From positions 310,001 through 374,000 of IMG/VR virus record IMGVR_UViG_3300029893_000001: a DNA stretch of 64,000 nt; one strand, given 5' to 3'. Positions 49,947-64,000 of the stretch are shown here, one piece after another. The first letter of the stretch is position 1, and each line of letters starts with the position of its first letter. A model generated the notes under the pieces. That model ran no database searches and was not told where the DNA came from. It saw only the letters and a program-made list of their open reading frames with translations. Both the position numbers and the translations under genes were made by a program.

Positions 49947-50204
49947 TCAGTGGCAGGACACCCAGAATCCGGGCCGGACCATGACGGCCCGATTGACCCG
50001 GCGGGTGACGTGCGCCCCGTACCGATTGCACGCGGCCTGCGTTTCGGCGAGGAGCGCATCCCCGCTCGACGCTTCCGAGCGGGGCGTCGAGGAATACTCG
50101 ACGCGGGCCGGCGTCGTCGCGCCGCAGCCCGAGGCGAGCAGCACGATGCAGACGAGCAGGAGCGAGAAGAGGCCAGCGCCGAGAGCCTTGATTTCGTCCA
50201 TCAT
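49947..50204 (-). CDS. small putative lipoprotein
   Basis: Hydrophobic signal ending LLASGC; promoter motif at 50228 and GGAGG. Confidence 0.65.
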   Translation of the reverse strand: MMDEIKALGAGLFSLLLVCIVLLASGCGATTPARVEYSSTPRSEASSGDALLAETQAACNRYGAHVTRRVNRAVMVRPGFWVSCH

Positions 50205-50309
50205 TATTCGGTCCTCCCTTGTGCCGACTAGTATCGGGTGGGTTCGCTCCTCTTAAATGGAGAAGCCCCCGGGCATCCGCCCGGGGGCTATTCCCTTGTT
50301 GCCCGGAAA

Positions 50310-50786
50310 TCAGCCGGGCAACAAATCGTTCAGCTCGTCGAGGAAATCGTCGACCTCCCCGTCCGAAGCCTCCGCGGGATCCGGGGTCGGCTCGGGAGCC
50401 GGAGCGGGGGCCGGCGCCGCCTTCGGAGTCGCCTTCGGTGCGGCCGGAGGCGCCACCGGAGCCGCTCCGCCGAGGCTCGACAGATCCAGATCGTCGATCC
50501 CCAGGGACAGCGCCGGAGCGCTGGCCGGCGGAGGGGTGGGCGCAGCCTTCGGAGCCTCGGGAGCCTTCGCGGCGCCCTTGCCCTTGCCCTTCGGACAGCC
50601 CCGGGCGTTGTGCCCCTGCTCGCCGCAGGTGCCGCAGGTGTAGGTCGGGGCCGGAGCCGCCATCACCGCCGCCGTGGCCAGCGTCGAGATGGGAACGACC
50701 GCGAAGCCCATCGCGCTCAGCGCCCGCACCACCTTGCCGAACTGCTCGTCGGTCATCTTGTCGGTCATCTTCTTGCTCATGATCAT
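50310..50786 (-). CDS. CCHC zinc-knuckle protein with Pro/Ala linker and acidic tail
   Basis: CGTCGEQGHNARGC; tail DGEVDDFLDELNDLLPG; promoter motif at 50823. Confidence 0.75.
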   Translation of the reverse strand: MIMSKKMTDKMTDEQFGKVVRALSAMGFAVVPISTLATAAVMAAPAPTYTCGTCGEQGHNARGCPKGKGKGAAKAPEAPKAAPTPPPASAPALSLGIDDLDLSSLGGAAPVAPPAAPKATPKAAPAPAPAPEPTPDPAEASDGEVDDFLDELNDLLPG

Positions 50787-50850
50787 GATTCCTTTCCGGC
50801 GAGGCGTCCCTCGCCTCATTTCCTAGTATCGAATGGGTTCGTTTGGCCGA

Positions 50851-50943
50851 CTAGCGCCGCTGACGCTCCGCGTGACGCCGCGCCAACTCGGCGCGGGCCT
50901 CCTCGATCGCTAGAATCTCGTCCACGTCCAAACCGTCGTACAT
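50851..50943 (-). CDS. 30-aa peptide MYDGLDVDEILAIEEARAELARRHAERQRR
   Basis: Promoter motif at 50968 and GGAGG upstream; below the ORF-track cutoff. Confidence 0.6.
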   Translation of the reverse strand: MYDGLDVDEILAIEEARAELARRHAERQRR

Positions 50944-51050
50944 GGGGCAAAAACCTCCGTTCGCCGTCTAATATCGGCCGGGTTCGCCCAATTGACATTT
51001 CGAGAGTAGCTTAAACGGGCTTTGGCCCGGGTTTCCCCGGGCCGCCCGCC

Positions 51051-51467
51051 TCACGCCGCCTTCGTACGGGCGGCCAGCTTGGCGGCGACCGCCTTGCTGT
51101 ACGCCGCCGCCTTCTCGTAGACCGCCGCCGCCAGGTGCAGATCGAGCCGGCCGATGCTCGACCCGAGGCACACGTGGCCCTCGGAGGGCACCCCGAGCAC
51201 CAGCTTGTTCCCCTGGCCGCAGATCCACCGCTGGAGACGCTGCCGGTTGCCGCTCGACGCCTTGGCCACGAAGACGTCGTGGACCGCGATGCGCGCCGGG
51301 CCCGGCGTCCCGTCCTCGCCGTGCATCGAGCGGAGCACGATGCCGAAGGACTTCACGCCCTCCCCGGCGGAGCCGACCTGCGCGCCGGTCGCGGCGTCCA
51401 GGTGGAAGACCAGGGCGGGGGCCAGCGGGAGATCGCGGGTGACGTCGTACGTGTTCTTCTTCGCCAT
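51051..51467 (-). CDS. hypothetical cassette protein
   Basis: Promoter motif at 51513, hairpin-TTTAA at 51011-51043. Confidence 0.7.
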   Translation of the reverse strand: MAKKNTYDVTRDLPLAPALVFHLDAATGAQVGSAGEGVKSFGIVLRSMHGEDGTPGPARIAVHDVFVAKASSGNRQRLQRWICGQGNKLVLGVPSEGHVCLGSSIGRLDLHLAAAVYEKAAAYSKAVAAKLAARTKAA

Positions 51468-51538
51468 GATTCACCATTCTTTCTGGGGCGCCGTGCCCCG
51501 TCGTTGTACCGACTAGTATTGTCAGGGTTCGGAAAACT

Positions 51539-51672
51539 TGGCGGAGTCACATCGATGCATGGGTGGAGCCCGTGTCTCTGTGCAAGTGACTCGCTCCCGA
51601 CGAGTATGTCCCTACGTGCAGCTTGCCGGTAACGTAGAGGGAGACCGCCGGGCGGCTATCATTCCTCCGCCA
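51539..51672 (-). ncRNA. candidate structured ncRNA (~135 nt)
   Basis: Directly downstream of the promoter motif at 51677; ends pair (TGGCGGAG/CTCCGCCA); nested stems; no credible ORF. Confidence 0.45.
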
Positions 51673-51743
51673 TTCACTACTATCAGCCGGGTTCAAATCC
51701 CTCTTAAACGCGAGAAGGCCCGGGGCTTTTGCCCCGGGCCCCA

Positions 51744-51941
51744 TCACCCGACCTTCCGAATCGGGGCGACGATGACTCGACTACGCAGCTCGCGCCGCTC
51801 TCGGAGCTTGCGGATCTGCAAATCGAGAAGCGCAATCGTGGCATCGAGCATTTCCCTTTCCTCGGGATCTTGCTCCCTCACACGCTTGCGCAGCGCCTCC
51901 GCTTTCTCACAGAGGAGTGCACGAATGACATGATCGTTCAT
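51744..51941 (-). CDS. hypothetical cassette protein
   Basis: Promoter motif at 51959, GGAGG, hairpin-TTTAA at 51704. Confidence 0.7.
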   Translation of the reverse strand: MNDHVIRALLCEKAEALRKRVREQDPEEREMLDATIALLDLQIRKLRERRELRSRVIVAPIRKVG

Positions 51942-52247
51942 TATTCACCTCCCACCAACTACTATCGAGCGGGTTCAATTGCTATTCGGGAGTAGGGTCA
52001 CGCGGAAATAGGAAAATGCCGACCAATTAATTTTGACCCATAAGTGGTAAAGTATGTAACCGCTCGTTCACACATTCTCACGCTTAAGTACGTATACGCT
52101 CGCAGCCATTGCGAGCTTGCTTGTACCCACTGCGAAATAGCCTAATAAGGCATGTACGCTCGCAGCCATTGCGAGCGGGGCGGGGCGTTAAAAGGCTACG
52201 GGCCCCAGAGGGGCCCTATCTCCTCGCAGCCGTTGCGAGAAATGGTC

Positions 52248-52478
52248 CTAGTAGTCCATCCGTCCGCTCGGAATGGGACCCGAGCCGAGCAGGTAGGCCA
52301 GCGCCTCGACCCACGCCGCTCGTCCAGCGGCCAAGTGAGACCTCAGGACGAAAATGCTTCCCAACGCTCCGACTTGCAGATCGAGAGCAAGTCGAGCCTG
52401 GTGCTCGTGGTAGCGTGCCGAGCCGACCGCTAGAGCAGCACGAGCACACTGATCACCGAAATCTTTCTCCGTGGCCAT
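52248..52478 (-). CDS. hypothetical cassette protein
   Basis: Promoter motif at 52496, GAGGAGG. Confidence 0.65.
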   Translation of the reverse strand: MATEKDFGDQCARAALAVGSARYHEHQARLALDLQVGALGSIFVLRSHLAAGRAAWVEALAYLLGSGPIPSGRMDY

Positions 52479-52569
52479 CGTTGCCTCCTCGCCGATTATT
52501 ATCAGCTGGGTTCAATTCGTGCGCGGTTAAATGCGTAACGGCTGCGAGGAATCTCGCAGCCGCTGCAAA

Positions 52570-52729
52570 CTCCCAAAGGGAAACTGGAATCCGTACTCAA
52601 TCACTTGTCCGACTTCGTTGTCGGGGTGTCTTTCGGGACCACACGATTCCCGCTTCTACGCCGAAGCTCCACGAAAGATCGTATGTTTCCAGCGTCCCTT
52701 TGGGAGCCCGATTTTTCGGTGAATCGGGC
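52570..52729 (-). ncRNA. candidate structured ncRNA (~160 nt)
   Basis: 12-bp plus 6-bp closing stem (52570-52589 / 52687-52706) with internal hairpins, preceded by hairpin 52706-52729. Confidence 0.5.
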
Positions 52730-52756
52730 GAACCGTTCTCGCAGCCGTTGCGAGAA

Positions 52757-53095
52757 TCAGGCGGCCGTGCCGAGCACCTTGCCCATCGACAGGAACCGGC
52801 CCTTCTCCCCGCGGAGCCTCAGGCGCAGATCCCCGCTCTCGTGGGCGTCCCGGATCTTGTCGCCGAGGCTCACCCGCACCCCCGCCTGCTTGCCCTGCTT
52901 CCTCAGGAACTCGCGGGCCTCCTCCGCCTCCTGCTGCTGCGCCTGCTGCCGCTCCTTGAACTGGCGGCGGGACTTGGCCTCGCGCTCCTTCGCCTTGCGC
53001 TCCTCGGAATCCTGCCAGAAGCGGCGCTTCACCTCCGCCGGGTCGAGGCGGCGGGTTCCGGGGACGAGCGTGGTGCGGGTCGCGTTCGTGGTCAT
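52757..53095 (-). CDS. hypothetical cassette protein (charged coiled coil)
   Basis: Promoter motif at 53131, AGGAGG. Confidence 0.7.
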   Translation of the reverse strand: MTTNATRTTLVPGTRRLDPAEVKRRFWQDSEERKAKEREAKSRRQFKERQQAQQQEAEEAREFLRKQGKQAGVRVSLGDKIRDAHESGDLRLRLRGEKGRFLSMGKVLGTAA

Positions 53096-53220
53096 GATTA
53101 TTCCTCCTGGGCCGGAGCCCGTTGCCCCGACTAGTATCGGCCGGGTTCGGCCGACTAGGGAATTAAACGCGCAACGGCTGCGAGATTTCTCGCAGCCGTT
53201 GCTTGTGTAGAGTCAGTGGG

Positions 53221-53403
53221 TCAGGGGATGCTGACCTTCGCCTCGACCGTCGCGGAGTCGAGATCGATGGCCTCGCGGCACGAATCCACGTCCACGATGT
53301 CATCGTTACCCACGAGCACATCCCACACGAGAGATTCCGCCTGCTGGGGACTCTCGGCCGTGACTTTCACCGTCACGGTCACAGTGAACTCCTGATCTTC
53401 CAT
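53221..53403 (-). CDS. small acidic cassette protein
   Basis: Promoter motif at 53423; cassette flanked by 19-bp direct repeats. Confidence 0.7.
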   Translation of the reverse strand: MEDQEFTVTVTVKVTAESPQQAESLVWDVLVGNDDIVDVDSCREAIDLDSATVEAKVSIP

Positions 53404-53451
53404 TTTGCATTTCCCTCGCTAACTATTATCCGCAGGGTTGCTTGTGTAGAG

Positions 53452-53730
53452 TCAGCCCAGGTCGAAGGGGTACTCCGAAGTGACGTCGCCCCACAGACGA
53501 TCGTCGTCGCCGTAGTAGTGGTGCGTGGCCGTCTCCGGGATCACCGGATTCTCCCGGTCGTCGTTCCTGTAGACACAGAAGCGCTCCCCCGGGCAGCAGT
53601 CGCCCAGGAAAAGCATTCCCGCTCCCATCAGGACGATCGTCTCGGCCGGCGTTCCCTGCGGGGCCACGAAATGCACCACGGTGACGTCGCGGTCGCTTTC
53701 GTAGCGCACGGAGTAGTCGTTGACGTTCAT
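53452..53730 (-). CDS. hypothetical cassette protein
   Basis: Promoter motif at 53751, GAGGAGG. Confidence 0.7.
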   Translation of the reverse strand: MNVNDYSVRYESDRDVTVVHFVAPQGTPAETIVLMGAGMLFLGDCCPGERFCVYRNDDRENPVIPETATHHYYGDDDRLWGDVTSEYPFDLG

Positions 53731-53850
53731 TCGGCTTTCCTCCTCAGCGACTATTATCGTCGGGGTTCACGTCCGACACGAAAAGCGCGTTAAATGAAAC
53801 AACGGCTGCGAGAAATCTCGCAGCCGTTGCGTGCCTTGGGAACTTTGGAA

Positions 53851-54195
53851 CTACAGGACCACCCATCCCCAGAAGACGGCCCAGGCGATGAAGCGGATCG
53901 GCCAGCGGGTCCAGGAGTCATTCTGCCAGAGGCAGAGCAAAATCCAAGTGACCCCGAACGCCGGCCAGAGCGTATTGAACCACGGGATCACCTGGACGAT
54001 TCCGCACCAGATCCAGTACGTCAGCAGGAAGCACGTGGAAATGTTGCAGAAGAACTCCACCCAATCCGAGATTTCCATCTCGTTGTGCGGGGTGTAGATC
54101 GTCCGGCCCGTCTCGTGGTCCCTGTAGACCTTGTACGTGGCGCGGAGCGGGCGGATGCTCGGCTGGAGCCGGCGGATATTCTTCGGGTTGGGCAT
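53851..54195 (-). CDS. Trp-rich membrane protein
   Basis: Promoter motif at 54214; three hydrophobic segments. Confidence 0.7.
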   Translation of the reverse strand: MPNPKNIRRLQPSIRPLRATYKVYRDHETGRTIYTPHNEMEISDWVEFFCNISTCFLLTYWIWCGIVQVIPWFNTLWPAFGVTWILLCLWQNDSWTRWPIRFIAWAVFWGWVVL

Positions 54196-54290
54196 GGGTC
54201 GTCTCCTCGCTGACTATTATCAACAGGGTTCTCGCAGCCGTTGCGAGAAATTAAAGTAAGATGGCCCCGGGTTTCCCCGAGGCCCTCTTT

Positions 54291-54677
54291 TCATCCGAGC
54301 GGCTGACTGAGAGCCACCGCACGGCGTCGAGCGTGGATCGGATTGCTCTTCCAGAAGCGAGCCCAGAAATCGCGCTCCGCTTGCTTCGCCTCGTGCTCAT
54401 TCCTGTACTGCAATTGAACGAGCAGATCGGCGTATTCCCCATCCCACTTGGGGTCGTACTCCAGCGACTCACGAACGAGCTGGAATCCCTCCGTTTCGAC
54501 GACCGCCTCGGCCCGGAGCGCCCGGAGTCGGTACGGGACGAATCGGAGGAGCGCCTCCCGATAGTCAGCGTCGTTTGTGATGAATCGGCTCGCCTGTCGG
54601 AGCCAGTCGGCAGCCGACTGTTGCTCTTTCATGACTCGCCGATACAGCACCTCGGAGAACGGGATGATTTCTGCCAT
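54291..54677 (-). CDS. hypothetical cassette protein
   Basis: Promoter motif at 54696, GGGAGG. Confidence 0.7.
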   Translation of the reverse strand: MAEIIPFSEVLYRRVMKEQQSAADWLRQASRFITNDADYREALLRFVPYRLRALRAEAVVETEGFQLVRESLEYDPKWDGEYADLLVQLQYRNEHEAKQAERDFWARFWKSNPIHARRRAVALSQPLG

Positions 54678-54759
54678 TCAACCTCCCTTCGCCGATTATT
54701 ATCAGCAGGGTTCTGTGCGGCCGTGAATGTCCTTAAAGCACGAAAAGGCCCTTGCTAGG

Positions 54760-54915
54760 GCCCTTTCGCGGGTCATTTCGGCAAAAGCTGACCAGGCTCG
54801 GAATACCAAGGCACGTGGTCGTGTACCTTGGTTAGCCTTGCCCCTTTTCGAGTCCATTATTGGTGGCTCGCCTTACGGGTGGGAGGGTGCAGCCCGGATG
54901 GAAACGGAACGAGAA
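54760..54915 (-). ncRNA. candidate ncRNA cassette (~160 nt)
   Basis: Between the promoter motif at 54922 and hairpin-TTTAA at 54733; no SD-led ORF; 10-bp stem ACCAAGGTAC/GTGCCTTGGT and others. Confidence 0.45.
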
Positions 54916-54958
54916 CACCATTTAGTATCGCCAGGGTTCTCGCAGCGGCTGCGAATCC

Positions 54959-55159
54959 CTAAATCCCGATCCAGTAGTTGTCCAGGTCGCTCAGCTTCAC
55001 GCTGGTGATCTCGGGATTGTGGTCCGGCAGACGTTGCTTGGCGAGTCGACGGACGTGAACATCGAACTCCTTTTTGTCCCTCGTTCGCGTCAGGACCGTG
55101 AATCTGTCCACCGCCGACTTCCCGTCGACTTCGTAGCACAGTTCGATGAGATACTTCAT
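54959..55159 (-). CDS. hypothetical cassette protein
   Basis: Promoter motif at 55178, GAGGAGG. Confidence 0.7.
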   Translation of the reverse strand: MKYLIELCYEVDGKSAVDRFTVLTRTRDKKEFDVHVRRLAKQRLPDHNPEITSVKLSDLDNYWIGI

Positions 55160-55247
55160 TTTCCGCCTCCTCGCCGAATATTATTGGCAGGGTTCTCGCA
55201 GTGACGGCGAGAATTTAAATTGAGAAAGGCCCCTCGCGGGGCCCGTC

Positions 55248-55466
55248 TCAGTCGTCGCGGAGGCACGGGGTCGGTCCCCCGCAGAATCCGCAGCGCCCCG
55301 GATTGTGGTACGCTGAGAGCACGTGATTGTTGGCCACGTGCTCCGGCTCGAAATAGTCTTCGGTTTCCCGAACTTCCATTCCTTCCGGGGCTTGCTCGTC
55401 GTCGAGGAGACGCACGGCTCGTGCCGTGGTCTTGCCGGGGTTGGCAATGTAGTAGCGGATGGTCAT
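55248..55466 (-). CDS. hypothetical protein, probably leaderless
   Basis: ATG lies 7 nt after GATAAT of the promoter motif at 55472; no SD. Confidence 0.6.
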   Translation of the reverse strand: MTIRYYIANPGKTTARAVRLLDDEQAPEGMEVRETEDYFEPEHVANNHVLSAYHNPGRCGFCGGPTPCLRDD

Positions 55467-55491
55467 GCCGAATATTATCGGCAGGGTTGAA

Positions 55492-55564
55492 TCGGACCGG
55501 TGGGATTCGAACCCACAACGTCCCGGTTATGAGCCGGGGGCTCTAACCATTGAGCTACGGTCCG
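55492..55564 (-). tRNA. tRNA with CAT anticodon (Ile2 or elongator Met; not initiator)
   Basis: CGGACCG TAGCTCAATGGTTAGAGC C CCCGG CTCATAA CCGGG ACGTT GTGGG TTCGAAT CCCAC CGGTCCG A; paired 1-72; no encoded CCA. Confidence 0.93.
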
Positions 55565-55921
55565 ATGGTTTTCACTAGGTTACGTTTCGCGTTACTTTGT
55601 GCGAACGATTCAGGCCCAGATCCCAGGCGCCGAATCCGGTTGCTCCGGGATCGGGATGTATTGGTTTCCCACGAATCCCGCCGCCGCGTCCAAGGCGACC
55701 ACACGGGGGAATGTCACCGCAGGGTGCGGCTCATCCTCCCAATAGGCTTCCCACGCAGCCAGAGCGAGATACTGCAAGAGCAGTTTTTCCATTATTCACC
55801 TCCTCGCCGTATCCATACGGGCTTGCACCACTTTTCTCAATGACACGAGGCCTTGGGTCGCTGTCTTCCCACAAACGTATGGGTGCAACCCATACGTTTT
55901 CGCCTTTGGTGTACACGAGAA

Positions 55922-56380
55922 TCAACCTTGGACAAATTGATCGGGTGTTCCGCAGTTCCACACCCTCAAGGGTGTGCCCCAACGGGTCGGCTCCTCGGTC
56001 CAGTCGAAGTGGATCCGGCGGGAGTTCCCCTTCCGAATCCAGAACTTCCCCCTCGCATCCTGAGGCCGACTCCACACGTCGGCCGAGACGTTCATCGAGT
56101 CCAGGAGATCGTTGACGATTCCGTGGAAATCCACCCAATCCTGCCACTCCAGAAAGCGAGCCTTCGGCTTCTTGCGGGGCGGGAAAGTGACGACGCACTC
56201 TCCGGGGTGATTCCCGCAGTATTCCTTCGCGGTCACGAGGCGGACGCGCTTCAGAAGGATCGTCTGGCCATCGACGCACGATTCCACGTTGAAGCGACCG
56301 TCGGCCCGCACCTTCTTTTGAAGGGCTACGTGGATTCGCTCGACGTCGCTGCCGTCGAGCACCTTGATTGAGTACGGCAT
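55922..56380 (-). CDS. hypothetical cassette protein
   Basis: Promoter motif at 56413, GGAGG. Confidence 0.72.
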   Translation of the reverse strand: MPYSIKVLDGSDVERIHVALQKKVRADGRFNVESCVDGQTILLKRVRLVTAKEYCGNHPGECVVTFPPRKKPKARFLEWQDWVDFHGIVNDLLDSMNVSADVWSRPQDARGKFWIRKGNSRRIHFDWTEEPTRWGTPLRVWNCGTPDQFVQG

Positions 56381-56491
56381 GATTATTCCTCCGTGGGTTG
56401 GTCCAGCGAGCTTTAGTATCGGGAGGGTTCTCGCCGTGGCTGCGAGAATTAAACTGGAAACGGGCCCCGGGAAAACCCCGGAGCCCGTTTT

Positions 56492-56854
56492 CTAGAACTC
56501 GCCCTCGTCGTCGTCCACCGCGTCGAGTGCGTCTGGACGTCCGAGGCCGCCGTCGGGCCCATGAGGGTGGTACCTCTTTTCCTTGTGGATGTCCAGAAAG
56601 AAGAGCGCCTCTTGCAGCGAACGCACCCTCTTTGGATTCTTCGTCCGCACCATTTTTGGGTTCGTCAGGGAATCCTTCGAGACCCACTCCTCGACGAGAA
56701 AGAAAACCTCCGGGCACCCATCGAGAGGAGCCGAGGGCCCGGTAATATTCTCGATGACGGTCGAGATTCGGCCTCGCTCGTCCGAGAAAATCACCGTGGT
56801 CGGCTCGAAATCGGTGAGCTTTTCGATGATTTCACTGTAGGTGAACTTTCGCAT
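56492..56854 (-). CDS. hypothetical protein
   Basis: AAGGGA SD, followed by hairpin-TTTAA at 56449. Confidence 0.65.
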   Translation of the reverse strand: MRKFTYSEIIEKLTDFEPTTVIFSDERGRISTVIENITGPSAPLDGCPEVFFLVEEWVSKDSLTNPKMVRTKNPKRVRSLQEALFFLDIHKEKRYHPHGPDGGLGRPDALDAVDDDEGEF

Positions 56855-57030
56855 TTGTTCCCTTCTACCGACGGTATCGGTACTCCTCGTCCACCTCTTG
56901 CTGCGTGGGCTCCCTTCCGAGCCTCTTGCGCAGATCGTCGCGGGCCGCGTTCCACTTGCGCTCGTCCTCCGCCCTTTCGAGAGCGCAGGCCGAGCATCCC
57001 ATCATCATGCACATGGTCGCCTCCCTCTGA

Positions 57031-57245
57031 GAGCGAGGCTCGGAGCCGGAATCCGAGATTAGTCTGTTTTCGCCTCTTGGCCTAGCTCCGCCTCCGTGCC
57101 TAAACCTACACGGCCAGCCTCTACACTAGGTTGCAGACGAATCCAGGGTCTAGCCGCTTTTGCCTTGGATGACTAGTCCTCGGCGCTTGCACCCACGGGG
57201 GCGTCACCCCTTGGGGTATCTGGATTCCGGCTCCGAGCCTCGCTC
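57031..57245 (-). ncRNA. candidate structured ncRNA (~215 nt) with 24-bp closing stem
   Basis: Perfect inverted repeat 57031-57054 / 57222-57245 just downstream of the promoter motif at 57260; internal hairpins; no ORF. Confidence 0.7.
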
Positions 57246-57351
57246 CTCGCCGTCGTGGTCTACTATCAGGAGGGTTCAACTCCTCTAATTAAACAGAGAA
57301 AGGGGCCTGTGGCCCTTCTCCCTGTTTTGGAATCTCGCAGTGGCGGCGAGT

Positions 57352-57990
57352 CTAGTAGGCCCGGCTCACCACCGGAAGCCCACGCAGTTCCTCGACTATT
57401 CCCTTGAAGGCGACCTCGACCTCGCCGGTGTCGGGCAGCTCGACCGTGCGATCGATTCCGTAGAGATCCTCCAGGAACTCCCGGAATCCAGGCGTGTCGC
57501 CGCGGAACGGCTTGTTGAGAAGCCACTCCGCGAACTCTTCTCGGCGATTCCAATCCAGATCCTTGGCGACCTGCGTACCGATTGCCACCCCGAGGATACA
57601 ATATCCTCGGACATCCCAACGATCGATGAACGACCTCGCGCTGCTGTCGCTCGAAAAGACTCGACACGAGTAGTGCACGTGCCAGTAGCCCCACTTCGCC
57701 GCCGGCTCGCTCTCCCTCACGTCGTCCATGGAGGCGTAGGAACCCATTTCCGGGCCCCACCCATCCGACGACGGCATCGCCCTGACGAACGTATGGGCAC
57801 TGTCGTAGCGATTTCGGATGAAGCTGCCGTCCGGCATCTTGAAGGCGTTGATCTGGTGGCAGTGCGGGTGCTTGAGATCCTCCTCCAGCGACTGCTTTGC
57901 GCTCTCGACGCTGCGCTCGCAAAAGAACCTCCACGAGAGCACCGCGCTGATGAGCCGCTGCCAGACCTTGTGAGAAATCTTGTTGTTCAT
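57352..57990 (-). CDS. hypothetical cassette protein
   Basis: GAGGAGG SD; partial promoter motif at 58013. Confidence 0.7.
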   Translation of the reverse strand: MNNKISHKVWQRLISAVLSWRFFCERSVESAKQSLEEDLKHPHCHQINAFKMPDGSFIRNRYDSAHTFVRAMPSSDGWGPEMGSYASMDDVRESEPAAKWGYWHVHYSCRVFSSDSSARSFIDRWDVRGYCILGVAIGTQVAKDLDWNRREEFAEWLLNKPFRGDTPGFREFLEDLYGIDRTVELPDTGEVEVAFKGIVEELRGLPVVSRAY

Positions 57991-58279
57991 TGTTCTGCCC
58001 TCCTCGCTCTAACTATTATCGTCGTCGACTACGATCCGATGCTCCCCATTCGCGGCGCATGCTGAATCACGTAGGAGACGCCGGTCAAAACCCAGCCAGC
58101 GGGAGTGTGGCCGTAGATGTTCACGCAGAACGTGAACACCAACACGGCGACGATGACGTACCACCTCTTGAGGGTTTCCACGATTGATTGACCTCCTCTC
58201 GCCGAACTATTATCGACGGGGTTCGCCGTCATATCGAGAACGACGAAATGCCCTCCGGGACTTACCGGAGGGCATTTCG

Positions 58280-58555
58280 TCAGGATTCCACGATCTTGCC
58301 GGCGTCGAGATCCACGAAACCGATGTGGACGTACTTCCAGCCCGTGCTTCCAATGAGCGTGGGCGAATCCGGGAGACGCTCCGGAGCCTCGGCGAACGTG
58401 CAGCCCTCTCCGACGAGCAGGAACGCCAAGTGGCCGAATCCAGAGGAATCCACCGCCGCGTTTTGGTAGGCTGCCCAGCGAGTTCGCTCGCGCTGTCGAG
58501 CGCGCATTTGGCTCAGGACTTCCTCGTCGATTTGGAGATCATTGGTCGTCATCAT
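58280..58555 (-). CDS. hypothetical protein
   Basis: Coupled downstream of the 58561-58932 gene. Confidence 0.65.
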   Translation of the reverse strand: MMTTNDLQIDEEVLSQMRARQRERTRWAAYQNAAVDSSGFGHLAFLLVGEGCTFAEAPERLPDSPTLIGSTGWKYVHIGFVDLDAGKIVES

Positions 58556-58560
58556 GTCCC

Positions 58561-58932
58561 TCAGTACAGGTTCACGTAGACGCTATCGCCCACGATTTCC
58601 ATCGCGTCCCGGACCTTTTGGGCCGCGTTCATTTCCTCGACTTCGCAGCGATCCCACGTCGCTCTCTGGTCGAGCACGTCGCGGAGAGCAGCCGGCGTGA
58701 CGAGCACCACTTCGGTGTCGCCCCAGGTGAACGCGTTGGTGATGAGTTCCGAGACGATCTCGTATTCCTCTTCGGAGAGGAACTCCGAGAGCGTGATGAA
58801 CTGGCACTCGAAAAGCGTCGGTCGCTTCATGGCCTCCTTTCGGTCGCAGTCTTCGCAGTTGCCTGGACCGCGAAACTCGAAGACAGTCGGACTGATTTCC
58901 TGGCCACACGTCTTGCAATGATATTCGGCCAT
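58561..58932 (-). CDS. hypothetical zinc-finger-containing protein
   Basis: Start MAEYHCKTCG after GAGGAG; promoter motif at 58950. Confidence 0.68.
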   Translation of the reverse strand: MAEYHCKTCGQEISPTVFEFRGPGNCEDCDRKEAMKRPTLFECQFITLSEFLSEEEYEIVSELITNAFTWGDTEVVLVTPAALRDVLDQRATWDRCEVEEMNAAQKVRDAMEIVGDSVYVNLY

Positions 58933-59020
58933 GTTTTTCTCCTCGCCTATTATTATCGACGGGGTTCGTGGTAACGACAAACGCAGAATAGGCCCCGAGT
59001 TTCCCCGGAGCCTATCTCTC

Positions 59021-59395
59021 TCACTTGTTCCTGAAGTACGTCTCGTACCCGATGTCCTTGGTGGACATCAGATTGTGCTTGAGATTCATGGACTCGCCGC
59101 TGAGCATGCGGCGCATTTCCTTCTCGCTGACGAAATCCACCCACTTCTCGTCGTGTTCGGGCCGAATCATGTGGTAGTTCTCGGGGTGAGAGCCCGTCGA
59201 ATCGTAGTCGGTCCACTTCATGATCTGTTGCGTGGTCCATCCGACCGCCGGCATTCCGGTCATGTCGTAGCACCCGCGATTGACCAATTCGGTGGCCACC
59301 ACTTCGTGCCCTTCGATGACCAGCTTGACGATCGGCCAGTCCTCGGGATCGAGAACGTTGTCGCTGAGTCGGGCGTAGAGAATCGGCTTTCGCAT
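59021..59395 (-). CDS. hypothetical protein
   Basis: GAGGAGG immediately after hairpin-TTTAA at 59408. Confidence 0.7.
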   Translation of the reverse strand: MRKPILYARLSDNVLDPEDWPIVKLVIEGHEVVATELVNRGCYDMTGMPAVGWTTQQIMKWTDYDSTGSHPENYHMIRPEHDEKWVDFVSEKEMRRMLSGESMNLKHNLMSTKDIGYETYFRNK

Positions 59396-59440
59396 CTTAC
59401 CTCCTCGTTAAACGCGAAAAGGCCCCTTTCGGGGCCTCTG

Positions 59441-59833
59441 CTATTCCTCGGGAGCAAGTAGCAGCATGGTTTCGGCGGCGTGAGTCAGCGCACCCCACTG
59501 GAGTGCTTCCTCCTCGCACACCGCCTTGTACGCGCGTTGAAGTACACGCAGAAGCACACGCTGCTCGAATTGAATCCGAGCCTCGCCGATCATTTCGTCG
59601 AGGGGCGGGCCCTCGTCGTTGTAGTAGGCGATGCACGCCGGCTTCATCTGCGGGAACGTCTCGCAGTACAGCCAGTCGAGCACGCTCTTGTATTCGTCTT
59701 CCCTCGGAGGGGCGATCTTTCGCAGCGCCTTGGCGTGTTTGCTCGTGCGGAGCCACGCCTCGACCTCCGGGAAGAGGCTCGACGTGAGAGGCCCTCGAAC
59801 GACGCAAACGCACACCATCTGGAGAGCACTCAT
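59441..59833 (-). CDS. hypothetical protein
   Basis: GAGGAGG SD just downstream of tRNA-Glu. Confidence 0.68.
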   Translation of the reverse strand: MSALQMVCVCVVRGPLTSSLFPEVEAWLRTSKHAKALRKIAPPREDEYKSVLDWLYCETFPQMKPACIAYYNDEGPPLDEMIGEARIQFEQRVLLRVLQRAYKAVCEEEALQWGALTHAAETMLLLAPEE

Positions 59834-59859
59834 TATTCACCTCCTCGCCATTATTGAAT

Positions 59860-59932
59860 TGACCCCAACGGGATTTGAACCCGTGTTCTCGCCGTGAAAG
59901 GGCGGCGTCCTAGGCCACTAGACGATGGGGCC
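59860..59932 (-). tRNA. tRNA-Glu(TTC)
   Basis: GGCCCCA TCGTCTAGTGGCCTAGGAC G CCGCC CTTTCAC GGCGA GAAC ACGGG TTCAAAT CCCGT TGGGGTC A; promoter motif at 59946; no encoded CCA. Confidence 0.95.
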
Positions 59933-60210
59933 GTGTCCTCGCCGATTACTATCGGCGGGGTTCACTTCTTTCCGTGGGTGGACTCCCACCATTTCAGATA
60001 CTCGTAATCCTTTCGGTCGAGCATCCGATAATAGGACTCGGGGTCCGCGTCGAGTTGGTATTCATTCTCAGCGGCGTTTTGGTCGACGCCAGGAAATGTC
60101 TCCTCGTACCTGACTCGTCGATTTTTCTTACGCTGTTTCTGCTGTCGTCGCCGTCGCATGGGATATTATTCCTCGGGTTAACGCCGAATAGGCCCCGAAA
60201 GGCCATCGGC

Positions 60211-60408
60211 AGAAGCGAATCGCAGTGGGGAGGCCTACAGAGGCGGATAAAGGCAAACCAATACCCGGAACCCTCGGTTCCGACGGGATTCGAACCCGCA
60301 TCACCGCCGCACCTGGTGCCACAGGACGCCCACTAGACAGCTCCGCGTTGGCACTCACGGAACGTTCATCGTAGGTCCCTGTAAGCCGCCCCACTGCGAT
60401 TCGCTTCT
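60211..60408 (-). ncRNA. candidate ncRNA (198 nt) with permuted tRNA-like (YrlA-type) module and kissing loops
   Basis: 20-bp perfect inverted repeat 60211-60230 / 60389-60408 extended by 11 bp; T arm GCGGG-TTCGAAT-CCCGT, loop-closed acceptor CGGAACC-GAG-GGTTCCG, D-like arm; followed by hairpin-TTAA at 60178. Confidence 0.72.
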
Positions 60409-60419
60409 TGGTTATTGTT

Positions 60420-61170
60420 TCCGCAGATTCAGTTTCCTCCGCCCTGCGCTGCGGCTCAATCTGAGTGACCATGAGAAGGGAGTGCAGTATTCGTTAGCCT
60501 CGTTGGAGATAGTGTGCCCTTTGACTGCCGAGGGTGCAATAGCAATCTGCACCTAAACATAGGCCCGGCAATCTACAGACGATAGTCCAGCGAAGCACCG
60601 AACAATGCGTGTAACCTACGCGATGGTCAAACAATCGAGATGAGTACGAAAGGGAGTTAATTGGCGAGTCAAGGCGTCCTCCTAACGAGACTCTTTTGGG
60701 CCAGCTTTCGCTTTTAAGTGGCGTGGAGGTACGACACAATCTGCAACGTCCAGTAGCAGAAGCCCTGCCCTTGTACTCAGAACATTATCCAGCATATGCT
60801 GGAAGCGAATGGCTATGTTCCTTCGCCACCCGTTCCCCTTGAGCCGCCTTTAGCGGACGCTCATTGGTCCTATCGGAAGCCTAGGCACATCTTGCCCAAG
60901 ATTCCAATAGTATCAATTCAATCTCCGAGCGGTCCAGCCAGGGGGACCGATCCCTGCCACGAACTTAGCGGCGGCGCGTCATTCGTGGCTATATAGTCTC
61001 GAAGTGGTTACGACTCTTGCCCGACAAGTGTCGCAGCAATCAACTGGTCCAGGGGAAGGATTCAGTTGAGTAGGTATGCTTAGTTGCTTCTTGGCGGGTT
61101 TCCTACTAAACCCAGCCAGTCATAAGCTGTAGAACAGGAGAATCATTTCCAGTCCTCCGGCTGTGGGATT
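60420..61170 (-). ncRNA. candidate large structured ncRNA (~750 nt)
   Basis: No credible ORF in an otherwise gene-dense region; dense hairpins and long-range stems; strand inferred from neighbours. Confidence 0.5.
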
Positions 61171-61205
61171 CATTAAACGCGAAGAGGGGCCCGAAGGCCC
61201 CTCTT

Positions 61206-61760
61206 CTATGCGTCCACCATCGCCCGACGGCTCCAGTAGAGGATTGCCTTGGCGAAATCCTCCGCCGAATAGGTGGCCGGCGTTCCTCCGGGGAGACCCA
61301 GGAAGTTGCGGGCCATCGCCATCGGAGTCTGGGGCTCCGGCTCCTCGGTGGGGCGGGCGTTGATCGAGACGATCTCCCACTCGCATTCCGTCGAGGCGTC
61401 GTTGCCGAGAACGTCGTGCCTGTAGAGCACGATCTCGACGACCTTCGCGGGAGCCTTCTCGCCCTTCGCACGCACCTCGATGTAGGGCTCCTCGCCCTCT
61501 CGCCGCGCCGAGAACGTCGCCCGGAGCGTCGTCTTCGGAGTGACCTCGATGACGCCACACTTGAAGTAGTGCGCCTGACTCTCGGTCATCGGGATGAGCA
61601 GAACGCCGTCGCGGTAGCCCGGCTTCGCCTCGGAGAACTGCTGCTCGACGAAAGCGATGAGCACATCCCACTTCGCATCGTGGGTGGCGATGAAGTGTGA
61701 GAAGGGGCTCTCCGGCGTCTGGCGACGCACGAAGTCATTGATTCCGATGAGGTTACCCAT
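61206..61760 (-). CDS. DUF3228-like protein
   Basis: INDFVRRQ, PGYRDGV, FSARREGEEP, IVLY, WEIVSIN, PMAMARNFLGLPGG; promoter motif at 61792. Confidence 0.72.
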   Translation of the reverse strand: MGNLIGINDFVRRQTPESPFSHFIATHDAKWDVLIAFVEQQFSEAKPGYRDGVLLIPMTESQAHYFKCGVIEVTPKTTLRATFSARREGEEPYIEVRAKGEKAPAKVVEIVLYRHDVLGNDASTECEWEIVSINARPTEEPEPQTPMAMARNFLGLPGGTPATYSAEDFAKAILYWSRRAMVDA

Positions 61761-61807
61761 GATTGATTCGGCCTCCCTTTGCCTCGCCAAACTACTATCG
61801 ATTGGGT

Positions 61808-62020
61808 TCAGTCCCTCTCGATCGCGGAGAAGTCTCCCAGGTTCCACGTGGTGTGAGTGGGCTGCATGATGCCGAGAACCTGAGTTCCGTAGTTCTTCTC
61901 GTAATCCCAGGTGTTGAAGTCGCCCCGCGACTGAGCGTAGGCAGCGATGACAGCCTCTCGTGGAGAGCACGAAAACGTCTGCTCGTGGCAGGTGGCGAGG
62001 TTGAGGACAGTGGTGAACAT
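61808..62020 (-). CDS. hypothetical protein
   Basis: Start MFTTVL after GAGGAGG following hairpin-TTTAA at 62040. Confidence 0.65.
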   Translation of the reverse strand: MFTTVLNLATCHEQTFSCSPREAVIAAYAQSRGDFNTWDYEKNYGTQVLGIMQPTHTTWNLGDFSAIERD

Positions 62021-62072
62021 GATTGATTTCCTCCTCTCATTAAACGCGAGAAGGGGCCCGAAGGCCCCGTTC

Positions 62073-62490
62073 TTAGTGACTCCAGGAGCGACGCACACCC
62101 TTCGAGAGGCGGCGAATCATTCGCTCCTCCTGAGCGATGACCTTCCTGGCGACCGGATTGAAATCGCGCAGGTCATCGCGCGTTGGGTAGATCCGGTCGA
62201 TGTCCAGTCCGAATCCCCTACCGCTGTGATGGCTGAAGAGACTTACATGACCAGGAAAAGCCATCGTCTCGATGTAGTGTCCAATCACGACTGTCGAGAT
62301 CGTGACGTGCCGGGTCTTGCACCACGTGCGGTACTCCGGACGAAAGAGATCCCAGGACTTCGGGATGCGCCGTCCGTACCACCGGATGATCGGCTGCTTG
62401 AAGACGACCTTCGTGACCCTCTGGACCTGACCGTCCTTGTGGGTGATGATCTCGGTGGAGCGCCGGAGAGCGCCGGAGAATGTTGCTCAT
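62073..62490 (-). pseudogene. cassette gene frameshifted by a 10-bp tandem duplication
   Basis: GCGCCGGAGA x2 at 62460-62479; removing one unit gives a single 135-aa ORF joining ATG 62490 to the 62073-62288 frame. Confidence 0.75.
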
Positions 62491-62608
62491 GATTGATTGC
62501 CTCCTCTGATTGATTGCCTCCTCGCTCAACTATTATCGGCGGGGTTCAGCGTTCTCTTAAACGCGAGAAGGGGCCCGAAGGCCCCTCGTACGCAGCTCAC
62601 TTAGTGAG

Positions 62609-63232
62609 CTAGTTGGTCTCCGAAGGAGGCGGCAGGACAGCCGATGGCCTTCGGGGAGACGCCCACTTTTCCGCGGCCTGTTCGATGTTGCCATCCGTCA
62701 GGGTGCCGACTTCCATCCTGATGAAGTGCATCGCCTCATTTCGGTAACGATCTGCTTCGAGCGAATCGCAGAAGACCTCGACGAGATTCTTCGCGTCGGC
62801 CAGACCGAGGCCGTGCATCTCGCGGGCCTTCTTGATGGCGGGGATCTTCCTGCCAGTGTTGTTCGGACCTCCGACCACCGCCATGAACTTCGCGGCGGGA
62901 TCGAGATCCTTGACGGGGAAGGGGCACTGCTTTCCGATGTTGCCTCGGATGCGATCGTTGTCGTACTTGAGGCGACCGTTCTCCTGTCGGAGCGTCGCGA
63001 TCTCTTCGCGCTGAAGAGCCACGGTCTTGTTCATGTGAGACCACTCACAGACCATCGCCGACGCATCGGCGTGGATCGACTCCAAGAGCGACGAGGCGCC
63101 GAGCACCATCGCATAGATGGGCACCAACACCAGGTTGAAGGGCTCGTCCTCGACCTGTTCCTTGAGACGGTCCGCGGCGTCTCGGACCATCGTCGTCAGG
63201 ATCTCCAGGTTCTTCACGAACGTGTCGTACAT
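62609..63232 (-). CDS. protein with ribosomal L7/L12 C-terminal-like domain
   Basis: RKIPAIKKAREMHGLGLADAKNLVE; GGAGG; promoter motif at 63263. Confidence 0.72.
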   Translation of the reverse strand: MYDTFVKNLEILTTMVRDAADRLKEQVEDEPFNLVLVPIYAMVLGASSLLESIHADASAMVCEWSHMNKTVALQREEIATLRQENGRLKYDNDRIRGNIGKQCPFPVKDLDPAAKFMAVVGGPNNTGRKIPAIKKAREMHGLGLADAKNLVEVFCDSLEADRYRNEAMHFIRMEVGTLTDGNIEQAAEKWASPRRPSAVLPPPSETN

Positions 63233-63625
63233 TACCAATTCCTCCGGGCCAGAAGTTGGCACTTAGTATCGCCAGGGTCCAACCCCTTAAGCAAGAAAAG
63301 GGCGGCCCCGAAGGACCGCCAATTCATCGGTACATGTTGGCTTCCTGATGGGAAGCCCAATCGTCGTTGACGATCTCGGCGAGTTTGCGAGCAACCTGCT
63401 CACCGTACTTCGAGATCCACTCTTGGAGTTGTTCCCCCGAGAGCGGCTTGATCTCGTATCCGACCATCGGGTCGGAAGCCGGAAGAGCAGGGAAAACCTG
63501 CGGCGGGTCCGAGAAGGCAAACTTGGTGGGTTGCATCGTCTCGACGACGGTGGCGATCACGAGATATTCCACTCCATCCAGAGTGAACTCGTGCTCCCTT
63601 TCGGGATAGGTGAAGCTCTTGTGAT

Positions 63626-63976
63626 TCACTCGCCCTCCTTCTGGTTGAGCCGACTGAGACACGTCTCGCAGATGATGACTTCGCCACGCGTCATCATGCG
63701 ACCACCGCAGTCTCCCCGCGGATTGTTGTTCCAATTCACGCAGTCATCCAGAGCGTACAGGCCGGTGACTTCGACAACCTCCGGAGAGGCGTCGCGGTGG
63801 TCGTAGATGCCCAGCTCCCACCGACCGTCGGCCATCTTCTGACCGGTGGTGTTGGACCAGTTTTCTCCGACGCACCACGGCTCCGGGAGAAGTTCCTCGA
63901 CCTTCGTCGGATCGTTCGGACAGATGATGAGGCGCTCGTCGAGATTGATCTCCGTTCGATTCGCCACGTCCAGCAT
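63626..63976 (-). CDS. hypothetical protein
   Basis: 116-aa ORF with C-terminal Cys cluster. Confidence 0.55.
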   Translation of the reverse strand: MLDVANRTEINLDERLIICPNDPTKVEELLPEPWCVGENWSNTTGQKMADGRWELGIYDHRDASPEVVEVTGLYALDDCVNWNNNPRGDCGGRMMTRGEVIICETCLSRLNQKEGE

Positions 63977-64000
63977 GGACTTGAGCCACTCCCGAGTCTG

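What the first reader, a model, noticed from the sequence alone, without database searches (positions are those of the whole stretch)
54760..54915. Complete promoter-operator-terminator cassette with no translatable gene
Seen: operator (54937) and promoter motif (54922) on one side, hairpin-TTTAA (54733) on the other. The ATG that opens a 29-codon frame lies 2 nt after the -10-like hexamer, probably before the transcription start. The interior forms CGAG-CCA/TGG-ACTCG, AGGCT..ACCAAGGTAC/GTGCCTTGGT..AGCCT and GGTCA/TGACC stems, with a pyrimidine-rich 5' segment (CACCCTCCCACCC) that looks anti-Shine-Dalgarno-like. Inference: a trans-acting sRNA.
Basis: partly seen in the sequence, partly recalled or inferred. 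Interest (0 to 1): 0.6.

Follow-up and report, generated by a model that had tools for sequence, protein, structure and literature searches.

The report
Orphan non-coding RNA unit, jumbo phage
In a packed array of small early-type genes in a 392-kb phage from the deep subsurface, one promoter-to-terminator unit carries no gene with a ribosome-binding site, so it probably makes a ~185-nt RNA whose function, expression and relatives could not be established.

Summary
The cassette is real and lies on the minus strand. It has a consensus copy of the phage's own 18-nt promoter (core 54923-54939) and a canonical local terminator (14-bp hairpin 54739-54770, then TTTAA). The ~180 nt between them hold no ORF with a ribosome-binding site.

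The promoter motif occurs about 80 times in the genome, all on this strand. It also drives tRNA genes. Hairpin+TTTAA sites number 22 on this strand and 1 on the other in the 32-kb gene array.

The 29-codon ATG lies 5 nt after GATA, upstream of the inferred start (54916-54919). Its codon usage falls between coding and non-coding.

The RNA has the shape of an sRNA: an unstructured 5' ~50 nt, then a 10-bp hairpin, smaller stems and the terminator. The body as a whole folds no better than shuffles. The anti-SD-like run is not unusual. Complementarity to 393 phage start regions is at chance.

No Rfam match, homologue or RNA-seq run exists, and all copies found are identical. The upstream 66-aa gene has no terminator of its own, so the stretch is also its 3' tail.

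Verdict: a plausible orphan phage non-coding RNA. Trans-acting function is untested. Moderate-low interest.

The parts
54940..54957 (-). Operator-like palindrome directly upstream of, and abutting, the promoter core. It is a perfect 7+7 palindrome with a 1-nt spacer (54940-54954) and a degenerate member of the local TTCTCGC-N7-GCGAGAA family.
   Evidence: Perfect family members overlap the promoters at window 54229-54249, 55193-55213 and 56428-56448.
54923..54939 (-). Phage-specific promoter core GAACCC-TGGC-GATA-CTA. The -10-like GATACT is at 54924-54929. There is no -35 element.
   Evidence: PWM score 26.6 against a median of 27.0 over 78 sites, with a strict strand bias.
54916..54919 (-). 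Inferred transcription start (motif positions 21-24). The RNA would begin GGUGUUCUCG or a few nt shorter.
   Evidence: Inferred from the -10 geometry and from leaderless genes of the same phage whose ATG lies 7-13 nt after GATA. Not measured.
54832..54921 (-). 29-codon ATG frame (stop TAA at 54832-54834). It has no Shine-Dalgarno sequence, and its ATG lies 5 nt after GATA, upstream of the inferred start.
   Evidence: Codon score is 0.02-0.07 per codon, against 0.56 (sd 0.34) for genes and -0.49 (sd 0.32) for off-frames.
54871..54919 (-). 5' part predicted to be unstructured and rich in pyrimidines. It contains the anti-SD-like run at 54877-54889.
   Evidence: z = +0.13; the motif is not rare.
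54849..54870 (-). Small stem-loop (CGAGCCA / UGG-ACUCG).
   Evidence: The boundaries were chosen by eye, so the z-score is biased.
54794..54838 (-). Main hairpin: a 10-bp stem (54823-54832 with 54805-54814, including one G-U pair) inside an outer 5-bp AGGCU/AGCCU stem.
   Evidence: -19.5 kcal/mol and z = -4.0 on the minus strand, against -17.7 kcal/mol and z = -2.5 on the plus strand.
54771..54793 (-). Weak GGUCA/UGACC stem-loop.
   Evidence: -5.4 kcal/mol, z = -2.1. It is not used in the full-length minimum-energy fold.
54733..54770 (-). Terminator: a 14-bp stem with two G-U pairs and a 4-nt loop, followed by a CUUUAA tail.
   Evidence: -24.2 kcal/mol and z = -5.3 on the minus strand, against -17.9 kcal/mol on the plus strand. 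It belongs to a set of 22 hairpin+TTTAA sites.
54959..55159 (-). Upstream 66-aa ORFan gene with its own promoter (55182-55195) and no terminator before the candidate's promoter. Its read-through transcripts would carry the candidate as a 3' UTR.
   Evidence: (19 nt from the stop codon to the next promoter).
54700..54713 (-). Consensus promoter of the next unit (128-aa ORFan, 54291-54677). It starts 20 nt after the candidate's TTTAA.

Best explanation
This is a stand-alone non-coding transcription unit within the array of roughly 35 short units (about 38 promoter copies) at the high-GC end of a 392-kb jumbo phage.

How it most likely works:
- RNA polymerase starts at the phage's compact 18-nt promoter, about 54916-54919 on the minus strand.
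- It stops at the hairpin+TTTAA terminator, about 54733-54738, giving an RNA of ~180-187 nt.
- The same stretch is also the 3' tail of read-through transcripts from the upstream 66-aa gene, which has no terminator of its own.
- The RNA has a ~50-nt unstructured, pyrimidine-rich 5' part, followed by a stable 10-bp hairpin, two small stems and the terminator hairpin.
- The most likely mode of action is as an RNA. The open 5' part would pair with, or be bound by, a partner (host or phage mRNA, or a protein). The 3' hairpins would give stability.
- It would be made together with the neighbouring small ORFan genes, some of which share a palindromic operator.

Shown: the signals, their family membership and the lack of a coding signature.
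Inferred: the start site, the early timing, and any activity of the RNA.
For: - Promoter: a consensus-quality member of a strand-exclusive family of about 80 copies. The same motif directly precedes tRNA genes, so it does drive RNA genes.
- Terminator: a member of a set of 22 (minus strand) against 1 (plus strand) hairpin+TTTAA sites.
- Both strong hairpins are more stable on the minus strand because of G-U pairs.
- No ORF has a Shine-Dalgarno sequence, while the neighbouring genes have GGAGG-type sites.
- All three sense frames score -0.36 to 0.00 per codon over the body, against 0.59 (sd 0.28) for real genes. Held-out genes of 49-72 aa score 0.55-0.66.
- The ATG lies upstream of the inferred start.
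- The 5' 49 nt are unstructured, z = +0.13.
- Genome-wide this is the only sizeable promoter-to-terminator unit without an ORF.
- The public gene calls leave the interval empty.
Against: - There is no expression data: no RNA run holds the phage.
- There is no homologue, so no covariation or conservation test was possible.
- All copies found are 100% identical.
- The body without the terminator folds no better than shuffles.
- There is no excess complementarity to phage start regions, and no long antisense match in the genome.
- The U-tract of the terminator is short.
- The 29-codon frame scores better than the two other frames of the same stretch (0.07 against -0.39 and -0.46), so a coding origin is not excluded.
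Confidence: 0.45

Rival explanations
1. It is a decayed or emptied cassette. On this reading a former small gene lost its leader and most of its frame. The promoter and terminator survive because they are recent or still useful, for example as the terminator of the upstream 66-aa gene. The RNA has no function of its own.
For: - The array is plastic: a sibling 403-kb contig lacks two blocks of units.
- The codon score of the 29-codon frame is intermediate, as expected of a decaying frame.
- The body fold is at chance.
- There are no relatives and no targets.
- All neighbouring genes are ORFans with fast turnover.
Against: - The promoter and terminator are both at full consensus quality.
- There is no similarity, at DNA or translated level, to any other part of the genome.
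- The 10-bp hairpin and the terminator keep strand-specific G-U pairs.
- The genome is otherwise tightly packed.
Confidence: 0.25
2. It is a small-protein gene. The 29-aa frame (ATG 54921), or the in-frame GTG at 54918, would be translated from a leaderless or near-leaderless mRNA.
For: - The phage does seem to use leaderless mRNAs. A 72-aa gene (55248-55466) and a 65-aa gene (59962-60159) have an ATG 8-10 nt after GATA, no Shine-Dalgarno sequence and coding-like codon scores of 0.55-0.57.
- The 29-codon frame scores higher than its two off-frames.
Against: - The ATG is only 5 nt after GATA. The other convincing leaderless candidates have theirs at 7-13 nt, so the start site would have to sit 2-5 nt further upstream than elsewhere.
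- GTG is a poor leaderless start (established knowledge).
- The codon score lies in the lowest 5% of real-gene windows.
- A ~98-nt structured 3' UTR would follow a 90-nt frame, whereas in several units of the array the next promoter begins within 60 nt of the stop codon.
- The gene callers did not call it.
Confidence: 0.12
3. It is a cis-acting leader or attenuator. The unit would be an upstream, terminator-gated second promoter for the 128-aa gene (54291-54677), with read-through controlled by a factor.
For: - The terminator lies between this promoter and the next gene.
- The phage has other promoters followed at once by a terminator hairpin ahead of a gene (genome 70470 and 269860).
Against: - The 128-aa gene has its own full-consensus promoter 20 nt after the TTTAA.
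- I found no alternative pairing that could compete with the 5' arm of the terminator (inspection).
- There is no riboswitch or leader match in Rfam.
Confidence: 0.08

Closest known systems
3'-UTR-embedded sRNAs with their own internal promoter that share the mRNA's terminator (for example DapZ and MicL of enterobacteria; from my own knowledge, not tested here)
   Same: It lies directly downstream of a coding gene that has no terminator of its own. It has its own promoter after the stop codon, shares the terminator, and has an open 5' part with 3' hairpins.
   Different: There is no sequence relation. No Hfq-type long U-tail is present and no target is known. The promoter is a phage-specific 18-nt motif rather than a host stress-sigma promoter. 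Expression is not shown.
Small stable RNAs encoded beside phage tRNA genes (T4 species 1 and 2, rnaC/rnaD; from my own knowledge)
   Same: It is a phage-encoded RNA of unknown function within about 600 nt of a phage tRNA gene (tRNA-Met at 55491-55565). It is driven by the same promoter type as the tRNAs.
   Different: It is a separate unit with its own terminator and is not co-transcribed with the tRNAs. There is no Rfam or sequence match.
Predicted sRNAs of virulent and jumbo phages (for example the 75-nt phiKZ candidate from dRNA-seq, PMC8244752)
   Same: It is a candidate non-coding unit in a lytic-type jumbo phage, defined by transcription signals. The paper notes that such sRNAs have been predicted for only a few virulent phages and that their functions are unclear.
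   Different: Those candidates rest on transcriptome data, and this one rests on sequence alone. The phiKZ candidate could not be confirmed by northern blot.
Antisense regulatory RNAs of temperate phages (lambda OOP, P22 sar; from my own knowledge)
   Same: A short RNA with its own promoter and an intrinsic terminator inside a phage regulatory region.
   Different: Those RNAs overlap their target gene on the other strand. Here nothing is encoded on the opposite strand, and the genome holds no antisense match above chance.

Membership tests
Any curated RNA family (Rfam 15) | Covariance-model match at or above the family's gathering score | tested here: not met
   The only match overlapping the unit is snoZ256 on the opposite strand (E = 3.4, 14 bits against a threshold of 50), which is noise.
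Trans-acting base-pairing sRNA | Own promoter and a discrete transcription unit | tested here: met
   Consensus promoter and a terminator of the local family. These are sequence signals only.
Trans-acting base-pairing sRNA | Accessible seed region followed by 3' stem-loops and an intrinsic terminator | tested here: met
   The 5' 49 nt have z = +0.13, followed by hairpins of -19.5 and -24.2 kcal/mol. The U-tail is short (CUUUAA).
Trans-acting base-pairing sRNA | Complementarity to target mRNAs above chance, or a conserved seed | tested here: not met
   29, 9 and 3 start regions hold complementary 8-, 9- and 10-mers, against 25.6 (sd 7.5), 6.9 (sd 2.8) and 1.5 (sd 1.2) in shuffles. Host mRNAs could not be tested because the host is unknown.
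Trans-acting base-pairing sRNA | Detected as a discrete RNA in cells | not testable with these tools
   no RNA run holds the phage. Only DNA contigs were available.
Leaderless small-protein gene | Start codon at or just after the transcription start | tested here: inconclusive
   The ATG is at motif position 19. The inferred start is at positions 21-24, and the other convincing leaderless candidates have their ATG at positions 21-27. The start site was not measured.
Leaderless small-protein gene | Coding-like codon usage | tested here: inconclusive
   0.02-0.07 per codon. This is the 5.7th percentile of in-frame windows and the top 5.6% of off-frame windows.
Leaderless small-protein gene | Peptide conserved in relatives | not testable with these tools
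   No relative carries this region.
3'-UTR-embedded sRNA with internal promoter | Lies downstream of a CDS without an intervening terminator, and shares that gene's terminator | tested here: met
   The stop codon at 54959-54961 is followed within 19 nt by the promoter. Only a short palindrome without a U-tract lies between them.
Transcription attenuator or leader | The downstream gene depends on read-through (it has no promoter of its own) and an antiterminator alternative exists | tested here: not met
   The downstream gene has a promoter with no mismatch to the motif at 54700-54714. No competing helix was found by inspection.
RNA anti-CRISPR (solitary repeat unit) | Close similarity to a CRISPR repeat of the host | not testable with these tools
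   The host is unknown. A 21-nt probe from the 5' part hit only two unrelated coding sequences.

The most novel reading that the evidence does not exclude
The unit would make an abundant early phage RNA with no known relatives. It would be co-regulated with host-takeover ORFans through the local palindromic operator. It would act on the host through its open pyrimidine-rich 5' part, for example as a sponge or decoy for purine-rich ribosome-binding sites or for an RNA-binding host factor. That would be a new class of RNA-level takeover factor in jumbo phages.
Probability: 0.1. Interest if true: 0.6.

Novelty: new member of a known kind. Interest (0 to 1): 0.3.

Why it matters
Regulatory RNAs of lytic and jumbo phages are barely charted. 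PMC8244752 notes that they have been predicted for only a few virulent phages and that their functions are unclear.

This phage offers an unusually clean grammar: one 18-nt promoter motif and one terminator type. That makes an ORF-less unit stand out by sequence alone. If the RNA is expressed, it would be a tractable example of an early phage non-coding RNA.

As it stands it is an orphan candidate from an uncultured subsurface phage with no host, no relatives and no expression data. Its practical value is therefore limited to annotation and as a lead for metatranscriptomics.

Tried and rejected
- **Known RNA families.** Rfam at gathering and at permissive thresholds found only the two tRNAs. 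ARAGORN found no tRNA-like or tmRNA gene in the unit.
- **Homologues by DNA.** All of the following gave nothing:
  - phage collection: tRNA hits only;
  - own genome: promoter and operator repeats only;
  - Viral contigs patterns (with 37);
  - Metagenome contigs patterns;
  - Genome contigs patterns: no hit, and two chance hits inside unrelated coding sequences.
- **Homologues through flanking proteins.** The 128-, 152- and 212-aa neighbours have no relatives in viral contigs. The 128-aa protein finds only itself among 5.8 billion proteins. Pfam and PHROGs are blank for ten neighbours.
- **Related phages found through the DnaB-like helicase (70-86% identity).** All four contigs are fragments. 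They end before the gene array and hold no match.
- **Natural variation.** Copies in a second study and in four contigs are identical over the unit, so no covariation test was possible.
- **Expression.** No RNA run exists.
- **Gene remnant.** tblastx and blastn-short against the genome found nothing above chance.
- **Target search.** RNAduplex energies were dominated by unrealistic long-loop duplexes and were discarded (one search timed out). They were replaced by a k-mer complementarity test, which gave a chance-level result.
- **6S-like, SRP-like and CsrB-like ideas.** Rejected on the lack of Rfam matches and, by eye, the absence of their motifs.

Full report
**Context**

The window is bases 310001-374000 of a 392,328-bp IMG/VR virus record. 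The same phage turns up in subsurface metagenomes and, in an independent study, in rock metagenomes. It is a jumbo phage:
- It encodes a DnaB-like helicase, other helicases and AAA ATPases.
- It encodes a sigma-70-family protein, but no RNA polymerase large subunit was found.
- Its nearest cultured relatives, the Pseudomonas phage Lu11 group, share only about 30% identity in DnaB.

At about window 50000 the G+C content rises from ~52% to 58-66%. From there to the end of the record the minus strand carries roughly 35 short transcription units (about 38 promoter copies) placed back to back. Most units consist of a promoter, a short leader with a GGAGG-type ribosome-binding site, a small ORFan gene and often a terminator. 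I call this array 'early-type' by analogy only. Its timing is not known.

**The signals**

*Promoter.* The phage has one dominant promoter motif, (T/C)GAACCC-TGcC-GATAnTA.
- It is 18 nt long, and no conserved -35 element appears in the 11 nt profiled upstream of the motif.
- A relaxed form gives 30 matches in the window against 2.06 expected.
- Genome-wide there are 78-83 copies on the minus strand. The plus strand has 17 one-mismatch matches, most of them poor.
- The motif also directly precedes tRNA genes: tRNA-Glu in the window and tRNA-like sequences downstream of the copies at genome 105752 and 309065 (read by eye). So it does drive RNA genes.
- The candidate's copy (54923-54939) scores 26.6 against a median of 27.0.

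*Terminator.* In the gene array the terminator type is a G+C-rich hairpin followed within a few bases by TTTAA.
- There are 22 such sites on the minus strand and 1 on the plus strand.
- 22 of the 24 TTTAA on the sense strand follow a hairpin.
- The candidate's terminator (14-bp stem at 54739-54770, then CTTTAAGG) is a typical member.
- Its two G-U pairs make it much more stable on the minus strand: -24.2 against -17.9 kcal/mol.

- A local family, TTCTCGC-N7-GCGAGAA, has perfect members overlapping three neighbouring promoters.
- The same arms also build long terminator hairpins at 53171-53202 and 53799-53830.
- The candidate's copy fits that family only with three mismatches, which is chance level genome-wide. 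I therefore treat it as a degenerate relative.

**What lies between the signals**

*Open reading frames.* From GATA to the terminator there is no ORF preceded by a Shine-Dalgarno sequence. The public gene calls leave a 282-nt gap here.

*The 29-codon frame.* It starts at ATG 54921, which is 5 nt after GATA (motif position 19).
- With GATAnT read as a -10 element, the start site falls at motif positions 21-24, that is 54919-54916.
- In this phage the convincing leaderless candidates have their ATG 7-13 nt after GATA. Among them are a 72-aa and a 65-aa gene with coding-like codon scores of 0.55-0.57.
- One ORF with an ATG 4 nt after GATA (genome 184120) overlaps a TAA and is more likely translationally coupled (inference).
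It remains an inference.

*Codon usage.* I computed a log-likelihood score trained on 38 genes of the array.

| Stretch scored | Score per codon |
|---|---|
| In-frame 28-codon windows of real genes | 0.56 (sd 0.34) |
| Stop-free off-frame windows | -0.49 (sd 0.32) |
| The 29-codon frame | 0.02-0.07 (in the 5% tail of both) |
| The three sense frames over the whole body | -0.17, 0.00, -0.36 |
| Real genes, 50-codon windows | 0.59 (sd 0.28) |
| Held-out genes of 49-72 aa | 0.55-0.66 |

This leans towards non-coding, but it does not exclude a decaying or atypical small frame.

**Structure**

- The full 184 nt fold at -72 kcal/mol with z = -3.8. Most of that comes from the terminator.
- The 145-nt body alone has z = -0.8, while control windows of the same array average -1.4.
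- The 10-bp hairpin (54805-54832, within 54794-54838) is individually significant, z = -4.0. It is stronger on the minus strand because of a G-U pair.
- By my own estimate, a perfect 10-bp inverted repeat with a 3-10-nt loop is expected about 0.001 times in 180 nt.
- The first 49 nt are unstructured, z = +0.13.
- The overall shape is therefore an open 5' part, then hairpins, then the terminator. This is what base-pairing sRNAs look like, but the RNA is not 'highly structured'.

**Tests of the sRNA idea**

- The anti-SD-like run (54877-54889) is not special. CCTCC occurs 33 times on the sense strand of the 32-kb array, which by my estimate is close to the compositional expectation.
- Perfect complementary 8-, 9- and 10-mers to 393 phage translation-start regions occur in 29, 9 and 3 regions. 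Shuffled RNAs give 25.6 (sd 7.5), 6.9 (sd 2.8) and 1.5 (sd 1.2).
- Two 9-nt matches do cover ribosome-binding sites (genes starting at genome 361941 and 156455). That is what chance gives.
- No long antisense match exists in the genome.
- Host targets cannot be tested because the host is unknown.

**Relatives and expression**

- Nothing in Rfam.
- No similar DNA in the phage, viral, metagenome or prokaryote-genome collections. The two 21-nt hits in bacterial genomes lie inside unrelated coding sequences.
- The flanking proteins are ORFans.
- Related phages exist, with DnaB at 70-86% identity. Two of them share the promoter motif. All four contigs stop at or before genome position ~353,000 and do not reach the array.
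- Copies from another study and from four contigs are identical over the unit, so there is no variation to analyse.
- No RNA run holds the phage.

- The upstream 66-aa gene (54959-55159) ends 19 nt before the candidate's promoter and has no terminator. The stretch is therefore also that gene's 3' UTR. The unit resembles sRNAs embedded in a 3' UTR with their own internal promoter.
- Genome-wide, only four promoter-to-terminator intervals lack an ORF. This is the only one longer than 80 nt. Two others are promoters followed at once by a terminator hairpin.

**Verdict**

- The most likely reading is a genuine non-coding transcription unit that yields a ~185-nt RNA (0.45).
- The rivals are an emptied or decaying cassette (0.25), a 29-aa leaderless product (0.12) and a cis-acting leader for the next gene (0.08).
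- It is a new, orphan member of a known kind, namely candidate sRNAs encoded by phages. PMC8244752 gives the state of that field.
- Interest is moderate-low until expression or conservation can be shown.

Noticed in passing
whole genome; in the window e.g. 54700-54714, 55182-55196, 59950-59964 (minus strand): There is a single 18-nt promoter motif, (T/C)GAACCC-TGcC-GATAnTA, with no conserved -35 element in the 11 nt profiled upstream. About 80 copies lie on the minus strand and essentially none on the plus strand. The plus-strand genes must use another promoter type, and the phage encodes a sigma-70-family protein (genome 247425-247622). Two related contigs (G001, G002) share the motif; two more distant ones do not.
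   Followed up: partly
window 50000-64000 and on to genome 392328, minus strand: The terminators of the gene array are G+C-rich hairpins followed by a conserved (GCG)TTTAA tail rather than a U-run. There are 22 on the sense strand and 1 on the other. The G+C content jumps from ~52% to 58-66% at about window 50000.
   Followed up: partly
window 54229-54249, 55193-55213, 56428-56448; also 52736-52756, 53171-53202, 53799-53830, 52537-52564: A family of nested palindromes is built from the arms TTCTCGCA/TGCGAGAA and GCAACGGC/GCCGTTGC. In one arrangement it overlaps three adjacent promoters like an operator. In another it forms 12-14-bp terminator hairpins. A binding protein is not identified.
   Followed up: partly
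window 57014-57277, minus strand: A ~250-nt leader lies between a consensus promoter and a 49-aa gene. Its ends form a perfect ~24-bp long-range helix that encloses ~170 nt (fold -138 kcal/mol for 311 nt). The 5' arm contains the usual leader and SD-like sequence. It could be a structured RNA element or a small inverted-repeat insertion. There is no Rfam match.
   Followed up: partly
window 51530-51694 and 50840-50985, minus strand: Two more short promoter-bounded units (164 and 145 nt) lack a convincing gene. One has only a 16-codon frame with its SD too close to the start. The other has a 30-44-aa frame.
   Followed up: no
window 55248-55466 and 59962-60159, minus strand: These are probable leaderless genes (72 and 65 aa). 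The ATG lies 8-10 nt after the promoter's GATA, there is no Shine-Dalgarno sequence, and the codon scores are coding-like (0.55-0.57).
   Followed up: partly
window 55491-55565 and 59860-59932, minus strand: tRNA-Met(CAT) and tRNA-Glu(TTC) lie inside the small-gene array. tRNA-Glu begins ~17 nt after a promoter and keeps part of the standard mRNA leader.
   Followed up: no
L069 (403,515-bp sibling contig) against genome 368377-375902: The sibling assembly joins genome 374373 to 371882 and 371659 to 368377. It therefore lacks two blocks of units, while the rest is 99.97% identical. The array gains or loses whole cassettes.
   Followed up: partly
genome 70421-70470 and 269811-269860 (outside the window), minus strand: Consensus promoters are followed immediately by a strong terminator hairpin (predicted transcript ~28 nt) ahead of a gene. 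These look like attenuator-type leaders.
   Followed up: no
window 50249-50325, minus strand: A sub-threshold Rfam match to ctRNA_pGA1 (34.4 bits against a gathering score of 45, E = 0.001) lies just upstream of the promoter at 50232-50245.
   Followed up: no
window 54910-54916 and 54936-54942: The first bases of the predicted RNA (GUUCUCG) are the exact inverted repeat of the operator half-site and promoter edge (CGAGAAC), so the two copies bracket the promoter core. A 7-nt repeat at this distance is expected about once by chance (the estimate is my own).
   Followed up: no
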